The notes beneath the pieces were generated by a model. The model saw nothing but the letters and a program-made list of their open reading frames with translations. It ran no database searches and had not been told where the DNA came from. From Macrostomum lignano (lineage: Eukaryota), in NCBI GenBank assembly GCA_002269645.1, contig NIVC01001275.1, positions 1-64,000 of the forward strand: DNA of 64,000 bases. Reading direction: 5' to 3'. The translations under genes were made by a program, and so were the position numbers. Position 1 is the stretch's first letter. Each line of letters starts with the position of its first letter. Shown here in pieces: positions 8,581 through 31,900 of the stretch.

Positions 8581-9900
8581 CTGTGTTTCACTCTACTCTG
8601 CTCTGTTTTACTCTGTTCCACTCTACTCTACTCTGTTCAACTCTACTCTGTTCCACTCTACTCTACTCTTTTCAACTCTACTCTACTCTGTTCCACTCTA
8701 CTCTACTCTGTTTCACTCTACTCTGTTCCACTCTACTTACTCTTTTCAACTCTACTCTACTCTGTTCCACTCTACTCTACTCTGTTCCACTCTACTCTAC
8801 TCTTTTCAACTCTACTCTACTCTGTTCTACTCTACTCTGTTCCACTCTACTCTACTCTTTCAACTCTACTCTACTCTGTTCCACTCTACTCTACTCTGTT
8901 TCACTCTACTCTGTTCCACTCTACTCTACTCTTTTCAACTCTACTCTACTCTGTTCCACTCTACTCTACTCTGTTCCACTCTACTCTTCTTTTCAACTCT
9001 ACTCTACTCTGTTCTACTCTACTCTACTCTGTTCCACTCTACTCTACTCTGTTTCACTCTGTTCACTCTCTACTTTACTCTGTTTCACTCTGTTCCACTC
9101 TACTTTACTCTGTTCCACTCTACTCTACTCTGTTCTACTCTACTCTGTTCCACTCTACTCTACTCTGTTTCACTCTGTTCCAGTCTACTCTACTCTGTTC
9201 AACTCTACTCTGTTCACTCTACTCTACTCTGTTCCACTCTATTCTACTCTATTCTACTCTACTCTACTCTGTTTCACTCTACTCTGTTCCACTCTACTCT
9301 ACTCTTTTCAACTCTACTCTCTACTGTTCCACTCTACTCTACTCTGTTTCACTCTACTCTGTTCCACTCTACTCTACTCTTTTCAACTCTACTCTACTCT
9401 GTTCTACTCTACTCTACTCTGTTCCACTCTACTCTACTCTTTTCAACTCTACTCTACTCTGTTCTACTCTACTCTACTCTGTTCCACTCTACTCTACTGT
9501 TTCACTCTGTTCCACTCTACTTTACTCTGTTTCACTCTGTTCCACTCTACTTTACTCTGTTCCACTCTACTCCACTCTGTTCTACTCTACTCTGTTCCAC
9601 TCTACTCTACTCTGTTTCACTCTGTTCCAGTCTACTCTACTCTGTTCAACTCTACTCTGTTCCACTCTACTCTACTCTGTTCCACTCTATTCTACTCTAT
9701 TCTACTCTAGTCTACTCTAGTCTACTCTACTCTGTTCCACTCTACTTTACTCTGTTCCACTCTACTCCACTCTGTTCAACTCTACTCTGTTCCACTCTAC
9801 TCTACTTTGTTCCACTCTACTCTACTCTGTTCCACTCTACTCTACTCTACTCTACTCTGTTCTACTCTGTTATACTATGCTATACTCTACTCTACTTTAA
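8581..9900 (+). repeat. (ACTCT)n-based degenerate satellite; left arm of an inverted pair
   Basis: CTCTA/CTCTG/TTCCA pentamer variants over ~1.3 kb. Confidence 0.92.
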
Positions 9901-10126
9901 TCTACTCCACTTAGCACATGCTTAAACGAAGACGGGCAGAAAAAAGTGTGTTTTTTTCTAATAGTTCGTTTGTTATAGTTTCACTCGTGGCATAAAATGT
10001 TGACACAGTCCAATGTGAGTACTGTGGACTTTTCCTCGTAAAGCAAAACAAATATTTTAAATTTGTAATTCTGGCAATGACTGCTCTTGCAAGCTTTTCT
10101 TGCTGATCGCTTAAGTACTGAATAAA

Positions 10127-10610
10127 ATATTGACTAAATAAACGTAATTGACTAAATGACTAAATAAACGTAATTGACTAAATGACTAAATAAACGTAAT
10201 TGACTAAATGACTAAATAAACGTAATTGACTAAATGACTAAATAAACGTAATTGACTAAATGACTAAATAAACGTAATTGACTAAATGACTAAATAAACG
10301 TAATTGACTAAATGACTAAATAAACGTAATTGACTAAATGACTAAATAAACGTAATTGACTAAATGACTAAATAAACGTAATTGACTAAATGACTAAATA
10401 AACGTAATTGACTAAATGACTAAATAACGTAATTGACTAAATGACTAAATAAACGTAATTGACTAAATGACTAAATAAACGTAATTGACTAAATGACTAA
10501 ATAAACGTAATTGACTAAATGACTAAATAAACGTAATTGACTAAATGACTAAATAAACGTAATTGACTAAATGACTAAATAAACGTAATTGACTAAATGA
10601 CTAAATAAAC
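10127..10610. repeat. Near-perfect 26-bp tandem repeat (TAAATAAACGTAATTGACTAAATGAC)
   Basis: About 18 copies, one carrying a 1-bp deletion. Confidence 0.95.
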
Positions 10611-10724
10611 ATAAAAGCCTTAAAACAGTATCAGATGTTACTGGATCTTACTGGATTATATGACAGATAGTAAAACTGTGTAGAGAACAACGTAGAACTT
10701 AGTAGACACGCGTAGAACAGGGCA

Positions 10725-12066: not shown

Positions 12067-15000
12067 ATGAATCTAACAGCCTTGACAACTGTCTGCATAC
12101 TTTTTCTGATAGCTGTGCATCACACAGGTATGTAGCTGAATCAGCATCAATACTTGTACATTAGTTGCAAGAATATTTATATCATATATTATGCCATAGA
12201 CAAAACCAATCCTGCACACCCGGAGAGATCTGTGCCATAGACACAACCAATCCTGCACACCCGGAGAGATCTGTGCCATAGACACAACCAATCCTGCACA
12301 CCCGGAGAGATCTGTGCCATAGACACAACCAATCCTGCACACCCGGAGAGATCTATGCCATAGACACAACCAATCCTGCACACCCGGAGAGATCTGTGCC
12401 ATAGACACAACCAATCCTGCACACCGGAGAGATCTGTGCCATAGACACAACCAATCCTGCACACCCGGAGAGATCTATGCCATAGACACAACCAATCCTG
12501 CACACCCGGAGAGATCTGTGCCATAGACACAACCAATCCTGCACACCCGGAGAGATCTATGCCATAGACACAACCAATCCTGCACACCCGGAGAGATCTA
12601 TGTCATAGACACAACCAATCCTGCACACCCGGAGAGATCTGTGCCATAGACACAACCAATCCTGCACACCCGGAGAGATCTGTGCCATAGACACAACCAA
12701 TCCTGCACACTCGGAGAGATCTATGCCATAGACACAACCAATTCTGCACACTCGGAGAGATCTATGCCATAGACACAACCAATCCTGCACACCCGGAGAG
12801 ATCTGTGCCATAGACACAACCAATCCTGCACACCCGGAGAGATCTGTGCCATAGACACAACCAATCCTGCACACCCGGAGAGATCTGTGCCATAGACACA
12901 ACCAATCCTGCACACCCGGAGAGATCTGTGCCATAGACACAACCAATCCTGCACACCCGGAGAGATCTGTGCCATAGACACAACCAATCCTGCACACCCG
13001 GAGAGATCTTTGCCATAGACACAACCAATCCTGCACACCCGGAGAGATCTGTGCCATAGACACAACCAATCCTGCACACCCGGAGAGATCTATGCCATAG
13101 ACACAACCAATCCTGCACACCCGGAGAGATCTGTGCCATAGACACAACCAATCCTGCACACCCGGAGAGATCTATGCCATAGACACAACCAATCCTGCAC
13201 ACCCGGAGAGATCTATGTCATAGACACAACCAATCCTGCACACCCGGAGAGATCTGTGCCATAGACACAACCAATCCTGCACACCCGGAGAGATCTTTGC
13301 CATAGACACAACCAATCCTGCACACCCGGAGAGATCTGTGCCATAGACACAACCAATCCTGCACACCCGGAGAGATCTATGCCATAGACACAACCAATCC
13401 TGCACACCCGGAGAGATCTGTGCCATAGACACAACCAATCCTGCACACCCGGAGAGATCTATGCCATAGACACAACCAATCCTGCACACCCGGAGAGATC
13501 TATGTCATAGACACAACCAATCCTGCACACCCGGAGAGATCTGTGCCATAGACACAACCAATCCTGCACACCCGGAGAGATCTTTGCCATAGACACAACC
13601 AATCCTGCACACCCGGAGAGATCTGTGCCATAGACACAACCAATCCTGCACACCCGGAGAGATCTATGCCATAGACACAACCAATCCTGCACACCCGGAG
13701 AGATCTGTGCCATAGACACAACCAATCCTGCACACCCGGAGAGATCTATGCCATAGACACAACCAATCCTGCACACCCGGAGAGATCTATGTCATAGACA
13801 CAACCAATCCTGCACACCCGGAGAGATCTGTGCCATAGACACAACCAATCCTGCACACCCGGAGAGATCTGTGCCATAGACACAACCAATCCTGCACACT
13901 CGGAGAGATCTATGCCATAGACACAACCAATTCTGCACACTCGGAGAGATCTATGCCATAGACACAACCAATCCTGCACACCCGGAGAGATCTGTGCCAT
14001 AGACACAACCAATCCTGCACACCCGGAGAGATCTGTGCCATAGACACAACCAATCCTGCACACCCGGAGAGATCTGTGCCATAGACACAACCAATTCTGC
14101 ACACCCGGAGAGATCTGTGCCATAGACACAACCAATCCTGCACACCCGGAGAGATCTGTGCCATAGACACAACCAATCCTGCACACCCGGAGAGATCTGT
14201 GCCATAGACACAACCAATCCTGCACACCCGGAGAGATATGTGCCATAGACACAACCAATCCTGCACACCCGGAGAGATCTGTGCCATAGACACAATCAAT
14301 CCTGCACACCTGGAGAGATCTATGCCATAGACACAACCAATCCTGCACACCCGGAGAGATCTGTGCCATAGACACAACCAATCCTGCACACCCGGAGAGA
14401 TCTATGCCATAGACACAACCAATCCTGCACACCCGGAGAGATCTATGCCATAGACACAACCAATCCTGCACACCCGGAGAGATCTGTGCCATAGACACAA
14501 CCAATCCTGCACACCCGGAGAGATCTATGTCATAGACACAACCAATCCTGCACACCCGGAGAGATCTATGCCATAGACACAACCAATCCTGCACATCCGG
14601 AGAGATCTATGCCATAGACACAACCAATCCTGCACACCCGGAGAGATCTGTGCCATAGACACAACCAATCCTGCACACCCGGAGAGATCTATGCCATAGA
14701 CACAACCAATCCTGCACACCCGGAGAGATCTATGCCATAGACGCAACCAATCCTGCACACCCGGAGAGATCTGTGCCATAGACACAACCAATCCTGCACA
14801 CCCGGAGAGATCTATGCCATAGACACAACCAATCCTGCACACCCGGAGAGATCTATGCCATAGACACAACCAATCCTGCACACCCGGAGAGATCTATGCC
14901 ATAGACACAACCAATCCTGCACACCCGGAGAGATCTATGCCATAGACACAACCAATCCTGCACACCCGGAGAGATCTATGCCATAGACACAACCAATTCT

Positions 15001-17688
15001 GCACACCCGGAGAGATCTGTGCCATAGACACAACCAATCCTGCACACCCGGAGAGATCTGTGCCATAGACACAACCAATCCTGCACACCCGGAGAGATCT
15101 GTGCCATAGACACAACCAATCCTGCACACCCGGAGAGATCTGTGCCATAGACACAACCAATCCTGCACACCCGGAGAGATCTGTGCCATAGACACAACCA
15201 ATCCTGCACACCCGGAGAGATCTGTGCCATAGACACAACCAATCCTGAACACAGAAAAAAACTTACATCTTCGGTAGCAAAATCTAATTCAGCAGTTTAA
15301 ATTTCTGCCTCAACAGAACAGCTCACAGCTAATGGGACCATGACTGCTCCGCCGCCGACGACTGCCCATACGACTACGACCGCCCCACCGCCAACGACAT
15401 CGACAAATTCGACGACAGCGGCCAGCACGGCCAGCCCGGCCACAACTCGCACCTCAGCAGCCACAACCGCCCAGTCTACCAGTGCATCCACCACCAGTGC
15501 ATCCACCACCAGCGCATCCACCACCAGTGCATCCACCACCAGTGCATCCACCACTGCCAAGCCCAGCCCGACAACAACTACTTCTACTACTAGTACTACA
15601 ACTACTACGTCTACGACTACAACTACAACTACCACGGCGGCCACAACTACAGCTAAGAAGAAGCCAAAGCGACTGTGCAAGTTTCCGTTCTGGCATCGGA
15701 ACGAGTGGCAGCACGAGTGCATGCCATACGGCTCCAAGGGCGCGCACTGGTGCTCGCTGACTCGGAACTTCACTAGGGATGAGGAGTGGCGAGACTGCGC
15801 TAGTGAGCTGGGATTGAGAGCTGGGATTATTAGGATTGAGAACTGGGATTATTAGGATTGGGAACTGGGATTATTAGGATTGGGAACTGGGATTACTAGG
15901 ATTGGGAACTGGGATTTCCGGGATTGGGAACTGGATGACTGGGATTGGGAAGTGGGATTACTGGGATTGGGAAGTGGGATTACTGGGATAACTGGGATTG
16001 GGAAGTGGGATTACTGGGATTGGGAAGTGGGATTACTGGGATTACTGGGATTGGGAAGTGGGATTACTGAGATTGGGAAGTGGGATTACTGAGATTGGGA
16101 AGGGGGATTACTGGGATTGGGAAGTGGGATTACTGGGATTACTGGATTGGGAAGTGGGATTACTGAGATTGGGAAGTGGGATTACTGAGATTGGGAAGGG
16201 GGATTACTGGGATTGGGAAGTGGGATTACTGGGATTGGGAAGTGGGATGACTGGGATTGGGAGTGGGATTACTGGGATTACTGGGATTGGGAAGTGGGAT
16301 TACTGGGATTACTGAGATTGGGAAGTGGGATTACTGGGATTGGGAAGTGGAATTACTGGGATTGGGAAGTGGGATTACTGGGATTGGGAAGTGGGATTAC
16401 TGGGATTGGGAAGTGGGATTATTATGATTAGGAATGTGACTGAGAAGTTTGATTTCTGAAGTCCGGAGCTATTAAAGCGCCATCAGAAATATTTCAAACC
16501 TGCAGGATACGACCTGATGCGGTACAAGTGCTCTGTGCCATTCCACCACGCGGGCAAGACGCACACCGAGTGCCAGCCGCTGCAGCTGGAGCCACTGGCC
16601 CGGCGAATCTTCTGGTGCTCCCTGGTGCCCAGCATCTCCAGCGTCACCTGGGCGAACCTCGGCACCGACTGGACCTTCTGCGAGGCGGCCAACGCCACCG
16701 GCCCCGACTACCTGAAATCCGTGGCCGGCTATCGTAGCCAGGCCGACGCCCAGATTCACGGTAACCATGGCAACAAGAATGACACAACTATGGCGAAACT
16801 TATTGAGCACGCTGTGCAGCAGGCGGGCGACTCAAAATCGGCGAATTCCGATGGCGACTCCACCGGAAGTGGCGGAGCCGCAGCCGCCACGCCGAGCTCC
16901 GTGCTGGGCGTCGCTCTGGGCATCGTTGGTCTGATCTTGGCCGCTGTGGCCGTGGCGGCCGCCTTTGCCGTGCACAGGAGGTAATTCAGGGGGTGAGAAA
17001 CTGTCTCTGATGTGATAAGCGCCTTGAGATTTTCTAACTCTTTACTTCAGTGATTAGAGGTCCGCATTTCATGCTTCACCATTCACAATTCACGATTCAC
17101 GATTCACACTTTATCATTCACAATTCACGATTCACGATTCACGCTTTATCATTCACGAATCAAGATTCCCGATTCACGATTCACAACTCACGGTTCACGA
17201 TTCATGATTCACGATTCACGCTTTACCATTCGCGATTCACGATTCACGCTTCATGATTTGTGATTCACAATTCACACTATACTATTCGTGATTCACGATT
17301 CACGCTTTATAATTCACGACTCACGATTCATGGTTCACGATTCATGATTCACGATTCACGCTTTACCATTCGCGATTCGTGATTCGTGCTTTAAGATTCA
17401 CGATTCATAATTCACAACTCAAGATTCTCGATTCACGCTTCGTATTCTTAAATTATTGCACGATCTCAGTTCGCCACTTCACACGCTTTTTAAACTACTG
17501 TCGAGCTTCATAGTAGTCTGAAAGGGTTTTTAATTGAAGAATCAAGCTGGGTAAGAATAATTGCTATTAAACGAGCAATCCACCGGGCCCATTCCAGAAA
17601 TCAGTACAAGCGGATCGATCCGCTGCTCTCGTCTGAGCAGGGAGCCGACAAAAGCAGCTACGGTGGAATGCAGGCCTATCACGACTGA
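12067..17688 (+). CDS. Type I membrane protein: signal peptide, Thr/Ser mucin stalk, two fibronectin type II-like domains, TM, short Tyr-containing tail; join(12067..12127,15317..15802,16506..16980,17598..17688), 370 aa
   Basis: All three introns are GT..AG with compatible phases (1,1,2), and the exons total 1113 nt with no stop before the terminal TGA. Signal peptide MNLTALTTVCILFLIAVHHT. FN2-like CKFPFWHRNEWQHECMPYGSKGAHWCSLTRNFTRDEEWRDC and CSVPFHHAGKTHTEC...FWCSLV...DWTFC. TM VLGVALGIVGLILAAVAVAAAFAV. Tail HRRNQYKRIDPLLSSEQGADKSSYGGMQAYHD. Confidence 0.85.
12192..15250. repeat. 41-bp minisatellite (GCCATAGACACAACCAATCCTGCACACCCGGAGAGATCTGT), ~74 copies, intron 1 of the FN2 gene
   Basis: Head-to-tail copies with only point variants and no spacers. 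Confidence 0.97.
15810..16430. repeat. GGGATT/ACTGGGATT-based minisatellite, intron 2 of the FN2 gene
   Basis: Begins a few nt after the donor GT at 15803. Confidence 0.9.
17065..17450. repeat. 7-bp (TTCACGA)n degenerate repeat, intron 3 of the FN2 gene
   Basis: Visible periodicity. Confidence 0.88.
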
Positions 17689-18305: not shown

Positions 18306-19075
18306 CTCTGGGCTCTGAGTGTCTGTGATGACGAATGTCACTCAATTGTGATCAGGCGATATTTCGGTTGCTTGCATAATTTCAATGTACTTCAGTCAAG
18401 TTATAAGAAACTTTTATGTATTACTCTACTAATAGTAGAAAGGAAATACGTTACCAATAAAATCATTAAAATGTTTATTACATCTGCTGCCCTGGAAAAA
18501 TTAGCAGGTCTTAATCACTTCACTACATAAGGGTTGCAACTTTCTTAGTCATTTCTTATAGTTCATCTGCACTCGTCTCTGTTTACTGTTTTCTCTCCCT
18601 CTCTGTCCAGTTCAATCTTGTCATTCTTATCTCTCCCATTGCTGCCTTCTGATTGGCTGTTCAATCTCGCCTCTTTCCTTAGTCGCGCACTTCACTCCAC
18701 CCCTCCTTTTCCTATTTGCACTCAACCCCCAGTTAATGTCTTTTAAATGTACCTGTTTAAGTTCATCGCCCTACTTACTGTTTGGTTTCAACTCTAATCG
18801 AAAAGTTTTCCTAAATAAAATTTCATCACACAGAGCTGTCAGTTGAAGCAAAAGCTCGAAAACTCGATGAAAGTGTAGCGTTTACTAAAGGTTATTTTGT
18901 TTGTGGAGTTAAATTGCCGCGATATTTCTGAACCATAGGACATCGTGACAGCCAACATCCGGTTACCGGAAAGACCAACCGAAAAATGATTCCAGCGATC
19001 AACCTCTCTATTCTGACAGTATAAAATCAACAGTATTCACAATTGCAGCCAGTTCCCGGACAAGCATCTCCAATT

Positions 19076-20254
19076 ATGCTGCTAGTAGTTCAACTGTTTC
19101 TGCTGTTGCTGCTGAATCTGCAGGTGCAGGCATCAGAGTCGTCCAACAACCAAGAGCGATGCGAACCAATCGCAGTTCCAATGTGTCAGGGGCTTGGCTA
19201 CAATTTTACCACCAAGACGCATAGTCTGATGGGCAGTGACCAAGAAGAGATTGGCCTTAATCTGCACTCATTCAGGCCGCTGGTCCAGGTTGGATGCTCA
19301 AAGGACCTGAAATTCTTTCTCTGCTCTGCCGCACTTCCGATGTGCGCACCGAGTTACGCGCGGCCAATTGGTCCATGCCGTCATCTGTGTAAGAGAGCTC
19401 GGCGAGGCTGCCGACCCTTGATGCGGAAGTACGGATTCGACTGGCCAAGTATGCTCAGGTGCAGTCGCTTCCCGGATGCTGGAGGAAACAGACTGTGTTT
19501 GGGGGACCTGGATAGCGGTGGCGGTAGCTTCGGAAGCGGAAGCGCCGACCGAGATGGGAGCGGAAGCGCCGACCGAGATGGGAGCGGAAGCGCCGACCGA
19601 GATGGGAGCGGAAGCGCCGACCGAGATGGGAGCGGAAGCGCCGACCGAGATGGGAGCGGAAGCGGCGACCGAGATGGGAGCGGAAGCGCCGACCGAGATG
19701 GGAGCGGAAGCGCCGACCGAGATGGGAGCGGAAGCGGCGACCGAGATGGGAGCGGAAGCGCCGACCGAGATGGGAGCGGAAGCGGCGACCGAGACGGAAG
19801 CGGAAGCGGCGACCGAGACGGAAGCGGAAGCGGCGACCGAGACGGAAGCGGAAGCGCCGACCGAGATGGGAGCGGAAGCGCCGACCGAGATGGGAGCGGA
19901 AGCGCCGACCGAGATGGGAGCGGAAGCGCCGACCGAGATGGGAGCGGAAGCGCCGACCGAGATGGGAGCGGAAGCGCCGACCGAGATGGGAGCGGAAGCG
20001 CCGACCGAGATGGGAGCGGAAGCGCCGACCGAGATGGGAGCGGAAGCGCCGACCGAGATGAGAGCGGAAGCGGCGACCGAGACAGAAGCGGAAGCGGCGA
20101 CCGAGACGGAAGCGGAAGCGGCGACCGAGACGGAAGCGAAAGCGGCGACCGAGACGGAAGCGAAAGCGGCGACCGAGACGGAAGCGGAAGCGGCGACCGA
20201 GACGGAAGCGGAAGCGCCAACGACGGCGATAGAAGCGAAACCTGCGAATGTTAA
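19076..20254 (+). CDS. Secreted Frizzled-CRD protein (sFRP-like, CRD closest in style to Fz5/8) with ~28 x GSGS(A/G)DRD repeats; no 7TM and no netrin domain; 392 aa
   Basis: Signal peptide MLLVVQLFLLLLLNLQVQA. Ten-Cys CRD: CEPIAVPMCQGLGYNFT...CSKDLKFFLCSAALPMC...PCRHLCKRARRGCRPLMRKYGFDWPSMLRCSRFP...LCL. The ORF is uninterrupted and ends ETCEC*. Confidence 0.88.
   Translation: MLLVVQLFLLLLLNLQVQASESSNNQERCEPIAVPMCQGLGYNFTTKTHSLMGSDQEEIGLNLHSFRPLVQVGCSKDLKFFLCSAALPMCAPSYARPIGPCRHLCKRARRGCRPLMRKYGFDWPSMLRCSRFPDAGGNRLCLGDLDSGGGSFGSGSADRDGSGSADRDGSGSADRDGSGSADRDGSGSADRDGSGSGDRDGSGSADRDGSGSADRDGSGSGDRDGSGSADRDGSGSGDRDGSGSGDRDGSGSGDRDGSGSADRDGSGSADRDGSGSADRDGSGSADRDGSGSADRDGSGSADRDGSGSADRDGSGSADRDGSGSADRDESGSGDRDRSGSGDRDGSGSGDRDGSESGDRDGSESGDRDGSGSGDRDGSGSANDGDRSETCEC
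19530..20215 (+). repeat. 24-bp coding minisatellite (GGAAGCGGAAGCGCCGACCGAGAT)
   Basis: About 28 copies, in frame with the CRD. Confidence 0.92.
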
Positions 20255-20639
20255 ATAGGCAGCAGAGACGGCAGCGGCATTGACGATTGACTCAACTATT
20301 CTTCTTCCAGTTGACGAAACTTTATGATGAATTTTACTCATGTATGAAAAATTTAATAATACAGACAACTACACGTCCAAGGCTTTAGGCTTCTGCAGGT
20401 GATCTCATTCTATGTGTAGTTTGGGTTTGACTTTGTGTTGCGTCACTATGTTTCCTCAGTCAAGCGGCGCTTAGGGCTAGCGCTTTTTCATGCATTTTTA
20501 ACTCCTGCTGATAGTTAAAAACACACACCGGCATTGTACGTCTACTTGCACCCTGGCACAATAGCAATTAGTGCATAAAACATAGATATAAAGATTTTCC
20601 TGGACATATTTGCGTTCTCCAGGATTTTATTCTGATTTG

Positions 20640-23600
20640 AGTGAGTGGGTGACTGACTGACTGACTGACTTGAGTGAGTGGGTGACTGACTGACTGACTG
20701 ACTGACTGACTGACTGACTGACTGACTGACTGACTGACTGACTGACTGACTGACTGACTGACTGACTGACTGACTGACTGATTAACTGACTGACACTATT
20801 TGACTGACTGACTGACTGACTGACTGACTGACTGACTGACTGACTGACTGATTAACTGACTGACACTATTTGACTGACTGACTGACTGACTGACTGACTG
20901 ACTGATTAACTGACTGACACTATTTGACTGACTGACTGACTGACTGACTGACTGACTGACTGACTGACTGACTGACTGACTGACTGACTGACTGACTGAC
21001 TGACTGACTGACTGACTGACTGACTGACTGACTGACTGACTGACTGATTAACTGACTGACACTATATGACTGACTGACTGACTGACTGATTAACTGACTG
21101 ACACTATTTGACTGACTGACTGACTGACTGACTGACTGACTGACTGACTGACTGACTGACTGACTGACTGATTAACTGACTGACACTATTTGACTGACTG
21201 ACTGACTGACTGATTGACTGATTGACTGACTGACTGACTGACTGACTGACTGATTGACTGACTGATACTATTTGACTGACTGACTGACTGACTGATTGAC
21301 TGATTGACTGACTGACTGACTGACTGACTGACTGACTGACTGATTGACTGACTGATACTATTTGACTGACTGACTGACTGACTGACTGACTGACTGACTG
21401 ACTGACTGATTAACTGACTGACACTATTTGACTGACTGACTGACTGACTGATTGACTGATTGACTGACTGACTGACTGACTGACTGACTGATTGACTGAC
21501 TGATACTATTTGACTGACTGACTGACTGACTGATTGACTGACTGACTGACTGACTGACTGATTGACTGACTGACACTATTTGACTGACTGACTGACTGAC
21601 TGACTGATTGACTGACTGACACTATTTGACTGACTGACTGACTGACTGATTGACTGACTGACTGACTGACTGACTGATTGACTGACTGACACTATTTGAC
21701 TGACTGACTGACTGACTGACTGATTGACTGACTGACACTATTTGACTGACTGACTGACTGACTGATTGACTGACTGACTGACTGACTGACTGACTGACTG
21801 ACTGACTGACTGACTGACACTATTTGACTGACTGACTGACTGACTGACTGATTGACTGACTGACACTATTTGACTGACTGACTGACTGACTGACTGACTG
21901 ACTGACTGATTAACTGACTGACACTATTTGACTGACTGACTGACTGACTGACTGACTGACTGACTGACTGATTAACTGACTGACACTATTTGACTGACTG
22001 ACTGACTGACTGACTGATTGACTGACTGACACTATTTGACTGACTGACTGACTGACTGACTGACTGACTGACTGACTGACTGACTGACTGACTGACTGAC
22101 TGACTGATTAACTGACTGACACTATTTGACTGACTGACTGACTGACTGACTGACTGACTGACTGACTGACTGACTGACTGATTAACTGACTGACACTATT
22201 TGACTGACTGACTGACTGACTGACTGATTGACTGACTGACACTATTTGACTGACTGACTGACTGACTGACTGACTGACTGACTGACTGACTGACTGACTG
22301 ACTGACTGACTGACTGATTAACTGACTGACACTATTTGACTGACTGACTGACTGACTGACTGACTGACTGACTGACTGACTGACTGACTGATTAACTGAC
22401 TGACACTATTTGACTGACTGACTGACTGACTGACTGATTGATTAACTGACTGACACTATTTGACTGACTGACTGACTGACTGACTGACTGACTGACTGAC
22501 TGACTGACTGACTGACTGACTGACTGACTGACTGACTGACTGACTGACTGACTGACTGACTGACTGACTGACTGACTGACTGACTGACTGACTGACTGAC
22601 TGACTGACTGATTAACTGACTGACACTATATGACTGACTGACTGACTGACTGATTAACTGACTGACACTATTTGACTGACTGACTGACTGACTGACTGAC
22701 TGACTGACTGACTGACTGACTGACTGACTGACTGACTGACTGACTGACTGACTGATTAACTGACTGACACTATTTGACTGACTGACTGACTGACTGATTG
22801 ACTGATTGACTGACTGACTGACTGACTGACTGACTGACTGATTGACTGACTGATACTATTTGACTGACTGACTGACTGACTGATTGACTGACTGACTGAC
22901 TGACTGACTGACTGACTGACTGATTAACTGACTGACTGACTGACTGATTGACTGACTGACTGACTGACACTATTTGACTGACTGACTGACTGACTGACTG
23001 ACTGACTGACTGACTGACTGACTGACTGATTGACTGACTGATACTATTTGACTGACTGACTGACTGACTGATTGACTGACTGACTGACTGACTGACTGAT
23101 TGACTGACTGACACTATTTGACTGACTGACTGACTGACTGACTGATTGACTGACTGACACTATTTGACTGACTGACTGACTGACTGATTGACTGACTGAC
23201 TGACTGACTGACTGATTGACTGACTGACACTATTTGACTGACTGACTGACTGACTGACTGATTGACTGACTGACACTATTTGACTGACTGACTGACTGAC
23301 TGATTGACTGACTGACTGACTGACTGACTGACTGACTGACTGACTGACTGACACTATTTGACTGACTGACTGACTGACTGACTGACTGATTGACTGACTG
23401 ACTGACTGACACTATTTGACTGACTGACTGACTGACTGACTGACTGACTGACTGACTGACTGACTGACTGACTGACTGACTGACTGATTGACTGACTGAC
23501 ACTATTTGACTGACTGACTGACTGACTGACTGACTGACTGATTGACTGACTGACTGACTGACTGACTGATTGACTGACTGACACTATTTGACTGACTGAC

Positions 23601-26600
23601 TGACTGACTGATTGACTGACTGACTGACTGACTGACTGATTAACTGACTGACACTATTTGACTGACTGACTGACTGACTGACTGACTGACTGACTGACTG
23701 ACTGACTGATTAACTGACTGACACTATTTGACTGACTGACTGACTGACTGACTGACTGACTGATTAACTGACTGACACTATTTGACTGACTGACTGACTG
23801 ACTGACTGACTGACTGACTGACTGACTGACTGATTAACTGACTGACACTATTTGACTGACTGACTGACTGACTGACTGACTGACTGATTAACTGACTGAC
23901 ACTATTTGACTGACTGACTGACTGACTGACTGACTGACTGACTGACTGACTGACTGACTGACTGACTGACTGACTGACTGACTGACTGACTGACTGACTG
24001 ACTGACTGACTGACTGACTGACTGACTGACTGACTGACTGACTGACTGACTGACTGACTGACTGACTGACTGACTGACTGACTGACTGACTGACTGACTG
24101 ATTAACTGACTGACACTATTTGACTGACTGACTGACTGACTGATTGACTGATTGACTGACTGACTGACTGACTGACTGACTGATTGACTGACTGACACTA
24201 TTTGACTGACTGACTGACTGACTGATTGACTGATTGACTGACTGACTGACTGACTGACTGACTGATGACTGACTGACACTATTTGACTGACTGACTGACT
24301 GACTGATTGACTGACTGACTGACTGACTGACTGACTGACTGACTGACTGACTGATTGACTGACTGATACTATTTGACTGACTGACTGACTGACTGACTGA
24401 CTGACTGACTGACTGACTGATTAACTGACTGACACTGATTTGACTGACTGACTGACTGACTGATTGACTGACTGACTGACTGACTGACTGACTGACTGAC
24501 TGATTGACTGACTGACACTATTTGACTGACTGACTGACTGACTGATTGACTGACTGACTGACTGACTGACTGATTGACTGACTGACACTATTTGACTGAC
24601 TGACTGACTGACTGACTGATTGACTGACTGACACTATTTGACTGACTGACTGACTGACTGATTGACTGACTGACTGACTGACTGACTGATTGACTGACTG
24701 ACACTATTTGACTGACTGACTGACTGACTGACTGATTGACTGACTGACACTATTTGACTGACTGACTGACTGACTGATTGACTGACTGACTGACTGACTG
24801 ACTGACTGACTGACTGACTGACTGACACTATTTGACTGACTGACTGACTGACTGACTGATTGACTGACTGACACTATTTGACTGACTGACTGACTGACTG
24901 ACTGACTGACTGACTGACTGATTAACTGACTGACACTGACTGACTGACTGACTGACTGACTGATTGACTGACTGACACTATTTGACTGACTGACTGACTG
25001 ACTGACTGACTGACTGACTGACTGACTGACTGACTGACTGACTGACTGACTGACTGACTGATTAACTGACTGACACTATTTGACTGACTGACTGACTGAC
25101 TGACTGACTGACTGACTGACTGACTGACTGACTGATTAACTGACTGACACTATTTGACTGACTGACTGACTGACTGACTGATGATTAACTGACTGACACT
25201 ATTTGACTGACTGACTGACTGACTGACTGACTGACTGACTGACTGACTGACTGACTGACTGACTGACTGACTGACTGACTGACTGACTGACTGACTGACT
25301 GACTGACTGACTGACTGACTGACTGACTGACTGACTGACTGACTGACTGACTGATTGACTGACTGACTGACTGACTGACTGACTGACTGACTGACTGATT
25401 AACTGACTGACACTATATGACTGACTGACTGACTGACTGATTAACTGACTGACACTATTTGACTGACTGACTGACTGACTGACTGACTGACTGATTAACT
25501 GACTGACACTATTTGACTGACTGACTGACTGACTGATTGACTGATTGACTGACTGACTGACTGACTGACTGACTGACTGATTGACTGACTGATACTATTT
25601 GACTGACTGACTGACTGACTGATTGACTGACTGACTGACTGACTGACTGACTGACTGACTGATTAACTGACTGACTGACTGACTGATTGACTGACTGACT
25701 GACTGACACTATTTGACTGACTGACTGACTGACTGACTGACTGACTGACTGACTGACTGACTGACTGATTGACTGACTGATACTATTTGACTGACTGACT
25801 GACTGACTGATTGACTGACTGACTGACTGACTGACTGATTGACTGACTGACACTATTTGACTGACTGACTGACTGACTGACTGATTGACTGACTGACACT
25901 ATTTGACTGACTGACTGACTGACTGATTGACTGACTGACTGACTGACTGACTGATTGACTGACTGACACTATTTGACTGACTGACTGACTGACTGACTGA
26001 TTGACTGACTGACACTATTTGACTGACTGACTGACTGACTGATTGACTGACTGACTGACTGACTGACTGACTGACTGACTGACTGACTGACACTATTTGA
26101 CTGACTGACTGACTGACTGACTGACTGATTGACTGACTGACTGACTGACACTATTTGACTGACTGACTGACTGACTGACTGACTGACTGACTGACTGACT
26201 GACTGACTGACTGACTGACTGACTGACTGATTGACTGACTGACACTATTTGACTGACTGACTGACTGACTGACTGACTGACTGATTGACTGACTGACTGA
26301 CTGACTGACTGATTGACTGACTGACACTATTTGACTGACTGACTGACTGACTGATTGACTGACTGACTGACTGACTGACTGATTGACTGACTGACACTAT
26401 TTGACTGACTGACTGACTGACTGACTGATTGACTGACTGACACTATTTGACTGACTGACTGACTGACTGATTGACTGACTGACTGACTGACTGACTGACT
26501 GACTGACTGACTGACTGACTGACACTATTTGACTGACTGACTGACTGACTGACTGACTGATTGACTGACTGACTGACTGACACTATTTGACTGACTGACT

Positions 26601-27012
26601 GACTGACTGACTGACTGACTGACTGACTGACTGACTGACTGACTGACTGACTGACTGATTGACTGACTGACACTATTTGACTGACTGACTGACTGACTGA
26701 CTGACTGACTGATTGACTGACTGACTGACTGACACTATTTGACTGACTGACTGACTGACTGACTGACTGACTGACTGACTGACTGACTGACTGACTGACT
26801 GACTGACACTATTTGACTGACTGACTGACTGACTGACTGACTGACTGACTGACTGACTGACTGACTGACACTATATGACTGACTGACTGACTGATTAACT
26901 GACTGACACTATTTGACTGACTGACTGACTGACTGACTGACTGATTGACTGACTGACTGACTGACACTATTTGACTGACTGACTGACTGACTGACTGACT
27001 GACTGACTGACT

Positions 27013-27046
<34 letters not shown>

Positions 27047-27907
27047 TTGACTGACTGACACTATTTGACTGACTGACTGACTGACTGACTGACTGACTGA
27101 TTGACTGACTGACTGACTGACTGACTGATTGACTGACTGACACTATTTGACTGACTGACTGACTGACTGATTGACTGACTGACTGACTGACTGACTGATT
27201 GACTGACTGACACTATTTGACTGACTGACTGACTGACTGACTGATTGACTGACTGACACTATTTGACTGACTGACTGACTGACTGATTGACTGACTGACT
27301 GACTGACTGACTGACTGACTGACTGACACTATTTGACTGACTGACTGACTGACTGACTGACTGATTGACTGACTGACTGACTGACACTATTTGACTGACT
27401 GACTGACTGACTGACTGACTGACTGACTGACTGACTGACTGACTGACTGACTGACTGACTGACTGACTGATTGACTGACTGACACTATTTGACTGACTGA
27501 CTGACTGACTGACTGACTGACTGATTGACTGACTGACTGACTGACACTATTTGACTGACTGACTGACTGACTGACTGACTGACTGACTGACTGACTGACT
27601 GACTGACACTATTTGACTGACTGACTGACTGACTGACTGACTGACTGACTGACTGACTGACTGACTGACTGACTGACACTATATGACTGACTGACTGACT
27701 GATTAACTGACTGACACTATTTGACTGACTGACTGACTGACTGACTGACTGACTGACTGACTGACTGACTGACTGACTGACTGACTGACTGACTGACTGA
27801 CTGACTGACTGACTGACTGACTGACTGACTGACTGACTGACTGACTGACTGACTGACTGACTGACTGACTGACTGACTGACTGACTGACTGACTGACTGA
27901 CTGACTG
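20640..27907. repeat. 7.3-kb (GACT)n satellite punctuated by GACACTATTT / GATTAACT variant units
   Basis: Directly visible; source of all SVSQ-type ORFs. Confidence 0.98.
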
Positions 27908-28935: not shown

Positions 28936-31900
28936 ATGGCCTGTCGATTCCGGATTTTTGCAGCCTCGCTGCTGCTAATCGGTGAGTTCAACCTGGTGCC
29001 GTGTGCAGTTCCGCTTCTGAGGCTCTGTTGACGTCCGTTGGGGATTTTTTATACCTTTTGACATTACATGCACTCCTAAAGACCAGTGCGGACCATTTGC
29101 GACTCTTGGAGGACAGGAGATTTTTTTAGACATTAGATGACCATTAAATAACCATCTGTGACCTCTGGGAATCATTGAGAATCATAGAAGATCATTGGAG
29201 ACCATTGGGGAAAATTTTGGACCATTGGGCACCATGGGAGACCATTGGAGGCCATTGGGGAAAATTTGGGACCATTGGGCACCATGGGAGACCATTGGAG
29301 ACCATTGGGCACTGTGGGAGACCATTGGGGACCATTGGAGACCTTTGGGGACCATTGGGGACCTTTGGGGACCATTGGGGACCATTGGGGACCATTGGGG
29401 ACCATTGGGCACTGTGGGAGACCATTGAGGACCTTTGGGGACCTTTGGGGACCTTTGGGGACCTTTGGGGACCTTTGGGGACCTTTGGGGACCTTTGGGG
29501 ACCTTTGGGGACCTTTGGGGACCTTTGGGGACCTTTGGGGACCTTTGGGGACCTTTGGGGACCTTTGGGGACCTTTGGGGACCTTTGGGGACCTTTGGGG
29601 ACCTTTGGGGACCATTGGGGACCATTGGAGACCATTGGGCACCGCGGGAGACCATTGGGGACCATTGGGGACCATTGGGAACCATTGGTGACCATTGGGA
29701 ACCGAGGGAGACCATTGGGGACCATTGGGGACCATTGGGGACCATTGGGGACCATTGGAGACCATTGGGCACCGCGGGAGACCATGAGAGACCATTAAAG
29801 TAGTCCGTTAAAGCGATCTACTTTACCACCAGAGTTTTGTAAAAAAAACTTTCGCCGAATCATTTTGTTCAGTAATTTTCGAGTCTCTAAGCTGCCATGC
29901 CAGCGATGAGCCGACTCTGCGCGAGCTGATGGAGCAGGACCTGAAGGCCAAGCAGCAGGCCGAGCTGGGACTGTCGCCTACGCCTACGGCCGAGTCGTCT
30001 GGCAAGAAGGCGGCCACGACGGCTGCCAGCTCATCGGATGACAAGTGAGAGACTGCAGCATCCGCTTGCTGGGATTATTTGGGCAGCAACTGCTTGCAGT
30101 AATGCTCACACGATGTTCCATAGCAGGGGCAGGCAAACTCCGGCTCCGTGAAACTTCACGGATTGAATAGCAATCCGGCCCGCTTAAAGTTTCTGTCTCG
30201 TATCAGCCCCCTATTCTTTTTTCTCCTCTCTCCTCTCTCCTCTCATCTCCCCTCTCCTCTCTCCCTCCTCTCTCCTCTCTACCTCCTCTCTCTTCTTTCC
30301 CTCCTCTCTCATCTCGTCTCTCCTCTCCTCTCCTCTCTCCCCTTTTCTCTCTCCCCTCCTTTCCTTTTCCTCTCCTCTTTCCTCTCTCCCCTAGTTGTTC
30401 CTTGTTCCTTGAGTTCCCCTAGTACTTGTTCCTTCCATGATTAAAACAAACTACCGCGCTCCCTTACCATCCAACTCGCCTCGAGTCAGAGTGCTCACTC
30501 CAGCTCGTCTCGAATCAGAGTGCTCACTCCAACTCACTCGTCTCGAATCAGGGTGCTCACTCCATCTTGTTTTGAATCAGAGTGCTCACTCCAACTCACT
30601 CGTCTCGAATCATAGTGCTCAATCCAACTGGTCTCGAATCAGAGTGCTTACTCCAACTCACTCGTCTCGAATCAGAGTGCTCAATCCAACTGGTCTCGAA
30701 TCAGAGTGCTCACTCCAACTCACTCGTCTCGAATCAGAGTGCTCACTCCAACTCACTCGTCTCAAATCATAGTGCTCACTGCAGCTTATATTGAATCAGA
30801 GTGCTCACTCCAACTGGTCTCGAATCAGAGTGCTCACTCTAACTCACTCGTCTCGAATCAGAGTGCTCACTCCAACTCACTCGTCTCGAATCAGAGTGCT
30901 CACTCTAACTCAATCGTCTCGAATCTGAGTGCTCACTCCAACTGGTCTTGAATCAGAGTGCTCACTCCAACTGGTCTCGAATCAGAGTGCTCACTCCAAC
31001 TGGTCTCGAATCAGAGTGCTCACTCCAACTGGTCTCGAATCAGAGTGCTCACTCCAACTCACTCGTCTCGAATCAGAGTGCTCACTCAGAAGCTGAGTAG
31101 CTGCTCCAACCCATCTCTAAGCAGGGTTACGGCTTACTGCTCAACTTCACTTGGAGTCTGAATGTCTGCTTTAACTCACCTCAATGCTGCGTCTTTGTTT
31201 CAACTCTCCGGTCGTGCCAGCTACACCAACTATCACTGTGGCTTCGCTTTTTCAGGAAAGGCAAAAAAGACAAGAGTAAAAAGGGAAAGAAAGATGAAAA
31301 GAAGGACAAGAAGGACAAGAAAGATGACAAGAAGGACAAGAAGGACAAGAAGGACAAGAAAGATGACAAGAAGGACAAGAAAGATGACAAGAAGGACAAG
31401 AAAGATGACAAGAAGGACAAGAAAGATGACAAGAAGGACAAGAAGAAGAAAAAGAAGGCCGCCGCAGCTGTGGCCAGCCACCAAGAGATGGCGGCCCAGG
31501 CGCAGCACCAGGCGCCGGTTAAGCAGAGCGGCGGCTCGGCTCCCAGCGGTGCCACCCTCGGCACCTCCGCCATGATCGGCATCGGCGTTGGCGTCGGCGT
31601 CGCCTGCCTGGTGGCCGTCGGCTCCGTTATCGGTGTGCTGGTGCACCTCAGGTGAGACTATTTGGTGCCAGTTGGCAGGGGAGCATTTGGCAAACCTTCT
31701 GGTGAAGCTTCGTGCACGAGGTAAAAATGAATGCGGACGCTCATGGAATCGAACCCCGGGTAACTTTGATTCGAGAGTTGACCGCAGAGCTGCTCTGACG
31801 TCTTGTGCAGGGTTTCAGATGTAATTATCCAACTGAGGGACTTATGACAATTCGTAGATAATTTTTTAACGCATCGGTGATACTTAACATATTTGGTGAG

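What the first reader, a model, noticed from the sequence alone, without database searches (positions are those of the whole stretch)
19076..20254. Secreted Frizzled CRD fused to ~28 Asp-Gly-Ser-Gly repeats: candidate Wnt-binding proteoglycan decoy
Seen: signal peptide, intact Fz CRD, a (GSGS[A/G]DRD) array, then ETCEC and a stop, with no 7TM or netrin domain. Established: Ser-Gly dipeptides next to acidic residues are glycosaminoglycan attachment sites, Wnts bind GAGs, and Fz5/8 receptors carry a CxC motif in the linker before the 7TM. Inference: this looks like a Frizzled receptor truncated at that linker motif whose linker expanded into a GAG-acceptor array. That would give a secreted Wnt antagonist or carrier architecture I do not recognise, potentially relevant to axial patterning and regeneration.
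Basis: partly seen in the sequence, partly recalled or inferred. Interest (0 to 1): 0.7.

Follow-up and report, generated by a model that had tools for sequence, protein, structure and literature searches.

The report
Secreted Frizzled-domain protein, Ser-Gly repeat tail
A gene of the flatworm Macrostomum lignano encodes a secreted Wnt-receptor-type binding domain followed only by a long, fast-changing acidic Ser-Gly repeat. It is probably a soluble Wnt-binding protein of unusual build; it is already annotated as a hypothetical protein but has never been studied.

Summary
Window 19076-20254 (+) is one uninterrupted 392-codon ORF. It encodes a signal peptide, an intact ten-cysteine Frizzled CRD (Pfam PF01392, E 6.7e-30), a 24-bp x 28.5 tandem array encoding (GSGS[A/G]DRD)n, the tail NDGDRSETCEC, and a stop.

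The organism is Macrostomum lignano. Three ~97%-identical copies are annotated from transcripts as hypothetical or 'FZ domain-containing' proteins. All three end in ETCEC-stop, with 15, 22 or 28 repeat units.

No Frizzled 7TM or netrin (NTR) coding sequence was found in the window or the paralogous loci. The gene is therefore neither a receptor nor a canonical sFRP.

The CRD is receptor-like: about 49% identical to Fz5/8, with the lipid channel retained. It cannot be placed in a subfamily; it is an orphan long branch.

The tail is predicted disordered, has net charge -34 and carries 39 Ser-Gly sites. Each unit also carries an Arg, which disfavours human XT1. The array is one of about 20 minisatellites in the window. 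GAG attachment is therefore plausible but unproven.

Verdict: a real, lineage-specific secreted Fz-CRD protein, a new variant of a known kind. The proteoglycan reading is an open hypothesis.

The parts
19020..19026 (+). TATAAAA box, 50 nt upstream of the ATG; likely core promoter
   Evidence: Read directly. It is identical in paralogs L001 and L002. The transcript-derived model P0003 starts 12 nt before the ATG, about 40 nt downstream of the box.
19076..19132 (+). Start codon and signal peptide (aa 1-19, MLLVVQLFLLLLLNLQVQA)
   Evidence: Hydrophobic core with V-x-A before S20. AF2 models a helix at 2-22. The cleavage site is inferred; no predictor was run.
19160..19498 (+). Frizzled-type cysteine-rich domain (aa 29-141, ten Cys; Pfam match aa 29-134)
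   Evidence: PF01392 at 104 bits, E 6.7e-30. Fz8 CRD E 3e-42. AF2 pLDDT above 90. Foldseek TM 0.90-0.93 and rmsd 1.0-1.2 A to Fz5/Fz8 CRDs. Lipid-channel residues F66, P68, M116, Y119, F121, W123 and P124 are retained.
19535..20218 (+). 24-bp x 28.5 tandem array encoding (GSGS[A/G]DRD)n
   Evidence: TRF score 1137, 96% matches, no indels. 25 matches against 0 expected. Unit string ABBBBCBBCBDEEABBBBBBBBFGEHHE. AF2 pLDDT below 50.
20219..20251 (+). Non-repeat C-terminal tail NDGDRSETCEC with terminal CxC
   Evidence: The tail is present in all three paralog copies. A CxC motif occurs in 18/25 Fz5/8-clade linkers and in 0/12 others.
20252..20254 (+). Stop codon TAA
   Evidence: The same stop is present in L001 and L002.
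20255..20649 (+). 3' flank, probable 3' UTR; AATAAT at 20355 and TATAAA at 20587, no canonical AATAAA
   Evidence: It is 98.4% identical to L001 and 92.3% to L002. The poly(A) site was not determined.
20650..27907 (.). (TGAC)n microsatellite of 7.3 kb bounding the gene downstream; stops in all three + frames
   Evidence: TRF gives 1862 copies. The same array follows the gene in L001 and L002.

Best explanation
This is a small, single-exon, TATA-driven gene of Macrostomum lignano. It is present in at least three near-identical copies. Its product is a secreted, soluble protein built from a Frizzled-receptor-type CRD and nothing else that folds.

The CRD keeps all ten cysteines and the hydrophobic channel that holds the Wnt palmitoleate. 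The most likely activity is therefore binding of lipidated Wnt outside the cell, without signalling. That would make it a decoy or carrier in the manner of an sFRP, but lacking the NTR domain.

The C-terminal 247 residues are a disordered polyanion with net charge -34. It was generated by slippage or unequal exchange of a 24-bp minisatellite, and its length changes quickly between copies. It may act as a soluble acidic spacer, or it may carry glycosaminoglycan chains. Which of these applies is not known. The terminal Cys-x-Cys could form intermolecular disulfides.

Shown: the ORF, the domain, the fold, the absence of 7TM and NTR, the copy-number variation, and the transcript-based models.

Inferred: secretion, Wnt binding, antagonist or carrier role, any GAG modification, and descent from an Fz5/8-like receptor.
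For: - ORF, CRD and array.
- Organism and annotated copies (PAA55948.1, PAA67090.1, PAA46849.1, UniProt A0A267E319).
- Origin of the annotation: RNA-seq and transcript assemblies, with ORFs called by TransDecoder (PMC5730564). The L001 CDS is contiguous through the repeat to the stop. The L002 model keeps 19 of the 24 in-register 24-bp windows at its own locus (22 repeat units plus the two windows that encode the tail).
- Receptor-like CRD: (49% identity, TM 0.9).
- Lipid channel: 6 of 8 mFz8 channel residues are identical, plus W129, and the other two are Q-to-S and I-to-V.
- N-glycosylation: the N43-F-T sequon aligns with the Fz8 NYT.
- No 7TM: ten Pfam-verified receptors used as tblastn queries found none in 64 kb plus three 11-21-kb loci, even at E<=10.
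- No NTR or any other domain: + strand ORFs 27.9-40.9 kb downstream, with most arrays and a few low-complexity ORFs left out.
- Tail disordered.
- CRD core differences between window and L002: 3 synonymous and 2 non-synonymous, weakly suggesting constraint.
- Conserved TATA box, with the transcript 5' end just downstream.
Against: - No binding, secretion or expression data exist for this protein. No paper mentions the gene IDs.
- Overall dN/dS between copies is about 0.95 over 459 bp (9 non-synonymous, 3 synonymous). That is too few changes to show selection.
- The CRD departs from four positions that are at least 90% conserved in relatives: T48 and H49 in place of the Pro-Asn of the 'MPN' motif, I59 and A86. 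Ligand specificity may have shifted.
- L001 has a 1-bp deletion in the signal peptide. This is either an assembly error or a dead copy.
- No Logan or ENA transcript-derived copy of the protein is in the 15-billion collection, so expression may be low.
- No ortholog outside M. lignano was found, so conservation cannot be judged.
Confidence: 0.6

Rival explanations
1. Proteoglycan decoy. The Ser-Gly array is xylosylated and carries many heparan or chondroitin sulfate chains, giving a secreted Wnt-binding proteoglycan.
For: There are 39 SG dipeptides, all with an acidic residue within 8 residues. There are 24 D-G-S-G sites with Gly at -1 and +1 and Asp at -2, and 10 SGxG sites. The rule is stated in PMC2063922. 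Gly at -1/+1 and acidic neighbours favour XT1 (PMC13038410). The protein has a signal peptide and the tail is disordered and accessible. There is a precedent for an Fz CRD on an HSPG that binds Wnt3a (PMC2270346).
Against: Each 8-residue unit has an Arg at -3 of the first Ser. Basic residues anywhere in the acceptor peptide lowered XT1 activity, and the same paper states that no consensus predicts GAG sites. In 17 of 28 units the second Ser is followed by Ala, not Gly. Unit number is unconstrained, at 15, 22 or 28. The flatworm GAG machinery and its specificity were not examined here.
Confidence: 0.3
2. Evolutionary debris. The gene is a transcribed but functionless remnant of a duplicated Frizzled-type gene, and its tail was overrun by a neutral minisatellite, like the many others in this region.
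For: About 23 kb of the 64-kb window lies in strong tandem arrays, several with periods divisible by 3 and with long artefactual ORFs. The array is 96% homogeneous and differs in length between ~97%-identical copies. Coding and flanking DNA diverge equally, at 2.4-2.6% versus about 3%. Overall dN/dS is about 0.95. Four near-invariant CRD positions have changed. L001 has a frameshift. No ortholog was found.
Against: All ten Cys, the fold and the lipid channel are intact although the CRD is no more than 54% identical to any relative. That much divergence without losing a single structural residue implies long purifying selection before the recent duplications. The ORF is open in the window and in L002. 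The TATA box and 5' end are conserved. Within the CRD core, synonymous changes outnumber non-synonymous ones, 3 to 2, on a third as many sites.
Confidence: 0.15
3. A soluble CRD with a non-Wnt ligand. It might bind free fatty acids or sterols, a Norrin-like ligand, or Frizzled CRDs themselves by heterodimerising.
For: Fz-type CRDs bind varied ligands. PDB neighbours include Fz4-Norrin, Fz-fatty acid and Smoothened entries. The window CRD has lost the near-invariant Pro-Asn of the 'MPN' motif and the Tyr in CS-x-Y. In NJ trees it groups with the Fz4 pair more often than with anything else, 87/200.
Against: The Wnt-lipid channel is retained. The best sequence and structure matches are Wnt-binding Fz5, Fz8 and Fz7 CRDs. 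No positive evidence points to another ligand.
Confidence: 0.1
4. First exon of a true receptor or sFRP whose remaining exons lie outside the window, or a mis-assembly.
For: In vertebrate sFRP genes the CRD is in exon 1 (my own knowledge). The 7.3-kb (TGAC)n array could hide a long intron. There is a weak donor-like GTTAA at the stop codon.
Against: The in-frame stop is present in three independent loci. Transcript-based models end there. No 7TM or NTR lies within 44 kb downstream in the window or within 10 kb in L001 and L002. Average M. lignano introns are 1.1-1.4 kb (PMC5730564).
Confidence: 0.03

Closest known systems
Secreted Frizzled-related proteins (sFRP1/2/5 and sFRP3/4)
   Same: Both have a signal peptide and an Fz-type CRD and lack a membrane anchor. 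Both are expected to bind Wnt extracellularly, acting as antagonist or carrier.
   Different: There is no NTR domain in the protein or downstream. The CRD scores far lower against sFRP3 (86 bits) and sizzled (59 bits) than against receptors (110-147 bits). Flatworms are reported to lack sFRP3/4 (bioRxiv 10.64898/2026.07.29.741434). The tail here is acidic, whereas the sFRP NTR is basic and binds heparin (my own knowledge).
Frizzled-5/8 receptors
   Same: These give the best pairwise sequence and structure matches for the CRD: 49% identity, TM 0.90-0.93. The lipid channel is conserved. A CxC motif after the CRD is typical of the Fz5/8 linker.
   Different: There is no 7TM domain or cytoplasmic tail. 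The CRD is not nested in the Fz5/8 clade. The score margin over Fz1/2/7 is only about 10 bits.
Collagen XVIII variant 3 (FZC18 module)
   Same: It is an extracellular proteoglycan core carrying an Fz CRD that binds Wnt3a and inhibits beta-catenin signalling (PMC2270346). This is the only documented 'Fz CRD on a GAG-bearing core' that I found.
   Different: It is a 170-kDa collagen with a few HS sites in an unrelated segment. Its CRD is active only after proteolytic release. It has no Ser-Gly repeat array and is restricted to vertebrates.
Serglycin / syndecan-type Ser-Gly GAG acceptor regions
   Same: Both have repeated Ser-Gly with acidic neighbours in a disordered secreted segment (rule in PMC2063922).
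   Different: Here one Arg is present in every 8 residues, which disfavours XT1. There is no experimental evidence of glycanation and no homology. The resemblance to serglycin and syndecan motifs is from my own knowledge.
CRD-only 'frizzled-5-like' proteins of corals (cluster of P0092 including XP_020607227.1; P0111, P0118)
   Same: These are short proteins with a signal peptide and a single Fz5/8-like CRD and no 7TM. This shows that stand-alone receptor-type CRDs arose elsewhere.
   Different: They are about 200 aa long with a Ser/Thr-rich linker and a hydrophobic C-terminus, so they are probably membrane- or GPI-anchored. They have no acidic repeat. They sit beside Fz5/8 in the tree, unlike the window CRD.

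Membership tests
Fz-type cysteine-rich domain (Pfam PF01392) | Score above the Pfam gathering threshold | tested here: met
   104.3 bits against a cut-off of 32.1, covering profile positions 1-108 of 110.
Fz-type cysteine-rich domain (Pfam PF01392) | Ten conserved cysteines and the mainly helical CRD fold | tested here: met
   Cys at 29, 37, 74, 83, 90, 101, 105, 112, 129 and 141. AF2 pLDDT above 90. Foldseek TM 0.90-0.93 and rmsd about 1.1 A to Fz5/Fz8 CRDs.
Frizzled receptors (class F GPCR) | Seven-transmembrane region (Pfam PF01534) following the CRD | tested here: not met
   It is absent from the protein. tblastn with ten Pfam-verified receptors finds nothing in the window or in L001-L003, even at E<=10.
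Frizzled-5/8 subfamily | CRD groups within the Fz5/8 clade | tested here: not met
   In the NJ bootstrap it is nested in Fz5/8 in 1/200 replicates, lies on the stem of the whole clade in 26/200, and is sister to the Fz4 pair in 87/200. The method is simple (NJ, 57 sequences, no flatworm receptors), so this amounts to 'unresolved' rather than 'excluded'.
Frizzled-5/8 subfamily | CxC or CxCxC motif in the linker after the CRD | tested here: inconclusive
   The motif occurs in 18/25 Fz5/8-clade representatives and in 0/12 others. The window ends in TCEC, which fits, but this is a 3-residue match at the extreme C-terminus.
Secreted Frizzled-related proteins | C-terminal netrin-like (NTR) domain | tested here: not met
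   There is no NTR in the protein. A Pfam scan of + strand ORFs at 27.9-40.9 kb, with most tandem arrays and a few low-complexity ORFs left out, finds none at E<=1.
Secreted Frizzled-related proteins | CRD closer to sFRP CRDs than to receptor CRDs | tested here: not met
   sFRP3 scores 86 bits and sizzled 59 bits, against 110-147 bits for Fz8/5/7/2/1/4/10.
Proteoglycan core proteins | Secretory-pathway entry plus Ser-Gly with flanking acidic residues | tested here: met
   There is a signal-peptide-like N-terminus. All 39 SG dipeptides have D or E within 8 residues, and there are 24 DGSG sites. The rule is as stated in PMC2063922.
Proteoglycan core proteins | Covalently attached glycosaminoglycan chains | not testable with these tools
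   This needs biochemistry. Sequence alone is not predictive, and the Arg in each unit is unfavourable for XT1 (PMC13038410).

The most novel reading that the evidence does not exclude
A Macrostomum-specific, secreted, multi-GAG Wnt-binding proteoglycan. A receptor-derived CRD is fused to a hypervariable GAG-acceptor array, and the length of that array (15-28 units between gene copies) sets how far and how strongly Wnt is sequestered or carried. This would be a previously unknown class of extracellular Wnt modulator acting in antero-posterior patterning and regeneration.
Probability: 0.15. Interest if true: 0.7.

Novelty: new variant of a known kind. Interest (0 to 1): 0.45.

Why it matters
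Extracellular control of Wnt range is central to axis patterning and to head-versus-tail decisions in flatworm regeneration. The known flatworm toolkit is described as Frizzled receptors, sFRP1/2/5 and Notum (bioRxiv 10.64898/2026.07.29.741434).

A stand-alone receptor-type CRD with a polyanionic tail would add a different kind of soluble Wnt binder in a transgenesis-capable model. It also offers a natural experiment, because gene copies differ almost only in tail length.

If the tail is glycanated, it would be a compact invertebrate counterpart of the collagen XVIII Fz-module proteoglycan. If the tail is not glycanated, the locus is still a clean example of a coding minisatellite creating a long disordered domain in a signalling protein.

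Tried and rejected
1. Looked for the missing receptor half. tblastn of 148 representative relatives, then of ten 7TM segments at E<=10, against the window and L001-L003 found only noise.

2. Looked for an NTR or any other domain downstream. A Pfam scan of most + strand ORFs of at least 35 aa between 27.9 and 40.9 kb found nothing. Most tandem arrays and a few low-complexity ORFs were left out.

3. Tried to find M. lignano Frizzled receptors, to test descent and intron positions. The word-indexed protein search returned only hits no longer than about 250 aa and none from M. lignano apart from this gene. The parent gene could not be identified.

4. Tried to find orthologs or the same architecture elsewhere. 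Among 2756 CRD relatives, none of the top 148 representatives has an SG-dense tail. The full-length query finds only its own cluster, and an exact-sequence look-up finds nothing.

5. Attempted subfamily assignment by NJ tree with bootstraps. It was unresolved. A first attempt timed out.

6. dN/dS between copies rests on too few substitutions (12) to be informative.

7. Considered the antisense and out-of-frame ORFs across the array (356, 279 and 260 aa). I rejected them as automatic by-products of a stop-free 24-bp unit.

8. Considered whether the tail DRSETCEC is a degenerate repeat unit, since it lies in register with the array. The similarity is too weak to decide.

9. Rfam and tRNA scans of the window were empty.

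10. Literature searches for the gene IDs returned nothing. The syndecan paper's text was not retrievable for the GAG consensus.
Full report
**What is in the sequence**

Window 19076-20254 on the + strand is a single open reading frame of 392 codons ending in TAA. It has five parts.

- Signal peptide. The N-terminus is MLLVVQLFLLLLLNLQVQA followed by SES. It has the shape of a signal peptide and is modelled as a helix at 2-22. No dedicated predictor was available.
- CRD. Residues 29-134 match the Pfam Fz domain (PF01392) at 104 bits against a cut-off of 32.1. All ten CRD cysteines are present.
- Repeat array. From 19535 to 20218, Tandem Repeats Finder reports a 24-bp unit, 28.5 copies, 96% matches and no indels. 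The unit matches 25 times within 3 mismatches, against none in 100 shuffles, and nowhere else in the window.
- Repeat translation. The array gives 28 eight-residue units: 17 GSGSADRD, 7 GSGSGDRD and 4 single-residue variants.
- Tail. The protein ends NDGDRSETCEC.

**Whose gene it is, and whether it is expressed**

The CRD retrieves three GenBank proteins of Macrostomum lignano at 92-97% identity:

- PAA55948.1 (BOX15_Mlig010918g1; UniProt A0A267E319, 'FZ domain-containing protein')
- PAA67090.1 (Mlig012237g1)
- PAA46849.1 (Mlig010918g2)

Their loci in assembly GCA_002269645.1 were fetched as L001, L002 and L003. L003 is the same copy as the window: its flank is 99.9% identical, but it is riddled with single-base indels typical of that older assembly. 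L001 and L002 are paralogous or homeologous copies, about 97% identical in coding and flanking DNA alike.

All three loci carry signal peptide, CRD, array and ETCEC-stop. The arrays have 15.4, 22.5 and 28.5 units.

The annotation of that assembly was built from RNA-seq and de novo transcripts, with ORFs called by TransDecoder (PMC5730564). The models are therefore indirect evidence that mRNAs contain the array and the stop.

- The L001 CDS is contiguous.
- The L002 model lacks 2 + 3 whole units relative to its own locus. That pattern is expected from collapsed short-read assembly, not from removal of the array.
- The L002 model begins 12 nt before the ATG, about 40 nt downstream of a TATAAAA box at 19020-19026 that is identical in the paralogs. 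This fits an independent promoter with the CRD in the first and only coding exon.

**What it is not**

There is no Frizzled 7TM region and no netrin-like domain in the protein.

I used 148 representative relatives as tblastn queries. Ten of them were verified by Pfam to carry PF01534. Nothing but the CRD itself was found in the 64-kb window or in the three loci. The 7TM segments alone gave only noise even at E<=10.

A Pfam scan of most + strand ORFs of at least 35 aa between 27.9 and 40.9 kb found no NTR and nothing else significant; most tandem arrays and a few low-complexity ORFs were left out. The stretch from 20.65 to 27.9 kb is a (TGAC)n array with stops in all frames.

The gene is thus neither a receptor nor a canonical sFRP.

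**What kind of CRD**

Against solved structures, the best sequence matches in bits are:

| Target | Bits |
|---|---|
| Fz8 | 142-147 |
| Fz5 | 139.5 |
| Fz7 | 132 |
| Fz2 | 129.5 |
| Fz1 | 127 |
| Fz4 | 121 |
| Fz10 | 110 |
| Fz3 | 91 |
| sFRP3 | 86 |
| Fz6 | 70 |
| sizzled | 59 |

An AlphaFold2 model built on a 55-sequence alignment gives pLDDT above 90 for the CRD. It superposes on Fz5 and Fz8 CRDs with TM 0.90-0.93 and rmsd 1.0-1.2 A. The alignment was rich in Fz5/8-like sequences, which favours that outcome.

The hydrophobic channel that holds the Wnt lipid in mouse Fz8 consists of Q71, F72, P74, I78, M122, Y125, F127 and P130, with W129 (PMC6873803). In the window it reads S65, F66, P68, V72, M116, Y119, F121 and P124, with W123. 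Six of the eight are identical and two are conservative changes.

The CRD is therefore receptor-like and looks competent to bind lipidated Wnt. Its subfamily is not resolved.

- True members of Fz4, Fz1/2/7 and Fz5/8 beat the next family by 40-55 bits. The window CRD does so by about 10.
- It is 47-49% identical on average to both Fz5/8 and Fz1/2/7 representatives.
- In 200 NJ bootstraps it is sister to the Fz4 pair 87 times, next to an unclassified pair 41 times, on the stem of the whole Fz5/8 clade 26 times, and nested inside Fz5/8 once.
- It departs from four columns that are at least 90% conserved in relatives: T48 and H49 instead of the Pro-Asn of 'MPN', I59 and A86.

No relative above 54% identity exists outside M. 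lignano among 2756 hits in a 1.8-billion-protein library. This is an old, divergent, lineage-restricted CRD that still keeps every structural residue.

**The CxC motif**

Of 25 Fz5/8-clade representatives with at least 80 residues after the CRD, 18 have CxC, and 11 of those have CxCxC, typically ...DCxCxCRxPL. None of 12 Fz1/2/7, Fz4 or other representatives has it.

Without the array, the window's TCEC would lie about 25-30 residues after the CRD. This is modest support for descent from an Fz5/8-like receptor truncated in the linker. It is still only a three-residue match, and it conflicts with the unresolved tree. I could not retrieve any M. lignano Frizzled receptor to test descent or intron positions.

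**The repeat tail**

The 247 residues after the CRD contain 69 G, 61 S, 59 D, 30 R and 18 A, with net charge -34, while the CRD is +7. AlphaFold2 gives pLDDT below 50 throughout the tail.

Points in favour of GAG attachment:

- All 39 Ser-Gly dipeptides have an acidic residue within eight positions. That is the rule quoted for xylosylation (PMC2063922).
- 24 sites are D-G-S-G, with the Gly at -1 and +1 that human XT1 needs (PMC13038410).

Points against:

- The same study found that Lys or Arg anywhere in the acceptor lowers XT1 activity. It states that no consensus predicts GAG sites. Every unit here has an Arg three residues before the first Ser.
- 17 of 28 units have Ser-Ala rather than Ser-Gly at the second serine.

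**The genomic setting weakens an adaptive reading of the array**

- About 23 kb of this 64-kb window lies in strong tandem arrays. These include a 41-bp x 75 array, a 42-bp x 37 array, a 15-bp x 76 array and the 7.3-kb (TGAC)n that starts 395 nt after the stop.
- Several arrays have periods divisible by three and produce long artefactual ORFs.
- The coding array is very homogeneous. Its unit strings in the three copies share their ends but differ in internal blocks. That is the signature of ongoing slippage or unequal exchange.
- A 24-bp unit can never break the frame, so an open frame says little.

GAG attachment is therefore plausible but unproven. I put it at about 0.3.

**Selection**

Between the window and L002, the first 459 bp differ at 12 positions, 9 non-synonymous and 3 synonymous, for dN/dS of about 0.95. 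Within the CRD core the split is 2 non-synonymous to 3 synonymous. The other non-synonymous changes fall at the signal-peptide cleavage region and after the last cysteines.

The numbers are too small for a test. The stronger argument for function is that the CRD is about 50% diverged from all relatives yet has kept all ten cysteines, the fold and the lipid channel.

**Most likely mechanism**

The product is a secreted, soluble, receptor-type CRD. It binds lipidated Wnt outside the cell and cannot signal, so it would act as a decoy or carrier. It is attached to a long, disordered polyanionic tail whose length drifts rapidly. The terminal Cys-x-Cys may give disulfide-linked dimers.

The acidic tail is the opposite of the basic, heparin-binding NTR of sFRPs (my own knowledge). 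It could keep the protein off the sulfated matrix, or it could itself be glycanated.

The ORF, domain, fold, lack of 7TM and NTR, copy-number variation and transcript-based models are shown. Secretion, Wnt binding and the direction of effect are inferred.

**Comparison with what is known**

- sFRPs have CRD plus NTR. The NTR was tested here and is absent.
- Frizzled-5/8 gives the best pairwise match and shares the CxC motif. The 7TM is absent and clade membership is not met.
- Collagen XVIII variant 3 is a heparan sulfate proteoglycan whose Fz module binds Wnt3a (PMC2270346). An Fz CRD on a proteoglycan is therefore not unprecedented.
- Serglycin and syndecan have Ser-Gly acceptor regions. The resemblance is only in composition.
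- Coral CRD-only 'frizzled-5-like' proteins carry a hydrophobic C-terminus.

None of the top 148 representative relatives combines a CRD with an SG-dense tail. A recent survey of flatworm Wnt components reports Fz1/2/7, Fz4, Fz5/8, Fz9/10 and sFRP1/2/5 in two other Macrostomum species and the loss of sFRP3/4. It describes nothing like this gene (bioRxiv 10.64898/2026.07.29.741434). No paper mentions the gene identifiers.

**Verdict**

It is already in GenBank and UniProt as an uncharacterised protein. Its architecture is a new variant of a known kind, the secreted Frizzled-CRD proteins.

The 'truncated Fz5/8' origin and the 'proteoglycan' function are reasonable hypotheses that the sequence neither establishes nor excludes. 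Interest is moderate at 0.45. It would rise to about 0.7 if glycanation and a patterning role were shown.

Noticed in passing
window 20650-27907: A 7.3-kb (TGAC)n microsatellite of about 1860 copies starts 395 nt after the stop codon. The same array follows the gene in paralogs L001 and L002.
   Followed up: partly
window, whole (for example 12192-15252, 32367-33932, 39085-40221, 8590-9911, 10131-10614): About 23 kb of the 64 kb is in strong tandem arrays, including 41-bp x 75, 42-bp x 37, 15-bp x 76 and 26-bp x 19. Many give long artefactual ORFs in several frames. The first 16 kb is collinear with L001 but has different array lengths.
   Followed up: partly
window 40904-41638 and 42572-43600, - strand: Two ORFs match the amiloride-sensitive sodium channel family (Pfam ASC, E 2.7e-22 and 1.1e-34). 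They cover the C- and N-terminal halves of the profile, so this is probably one two-exon DEG/ENaC channel gene.
   Followed up: no
window 58644-58997 (+) and 54637-55167 (+): There is an NDUFB4-like ORF (PF07225, E 8.5e-9). There is also a weak reverse-transcriptase fragment (PF00078, E 5e-5, below the Pfam cut-off).
   Followed up: no
window 31101-31652 (+): This ORF has a (KKD/KKDD)n low-complexity run followed by an Ala/Gly-rich stretch and a hydrophobic, transmembrane-like segment. It gives only sub-threshold Pfam noise.
   Followed up: no
L001 about 9923 (signal-peptide codons): L001 has a 1-bp deletion in the signal-peptide codons, which is why its annotated protein starts at the internal Met36. 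This is either an assembly error or an inactivated copy. L003 has five single-base indels across the CRD relative to the window, and these look like assembly errors.
   Followed up: partly
representative library hits P0004-P0040: Many proteins from unidentified sources carry 3-15 tandem Fz CRDs, for example P0004 (1834 aa, 13 CRDs) and P0025 (6305 aa, 15 CRDs). They outscore all single-CRD relatives.
   Followed up: no
P0092, P0111, P0118: These are coral-associated proteins of about 200 aa with a signal peptide, one Fz5/8-like CRD, a Ser/Thr-rich linker and a hydrophobic C-terminus. One cluster member is Orbicella faveolata XP_020607227.1. They may be membrane- or GPI-anchored stand-alone CRDs.
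   Followed up: no
window 19217-19222, 19250-19252, 19331-19333 (aa T48, H49, I59, A86): The CRD deviates from four columns that are at least 90% conserved in relatives: the Pro-Asn of the 'MPN' motif, an Ala, and the Tyr of CS-x-Y. This may indicate altered ligand contacts.
   Followed up: partly
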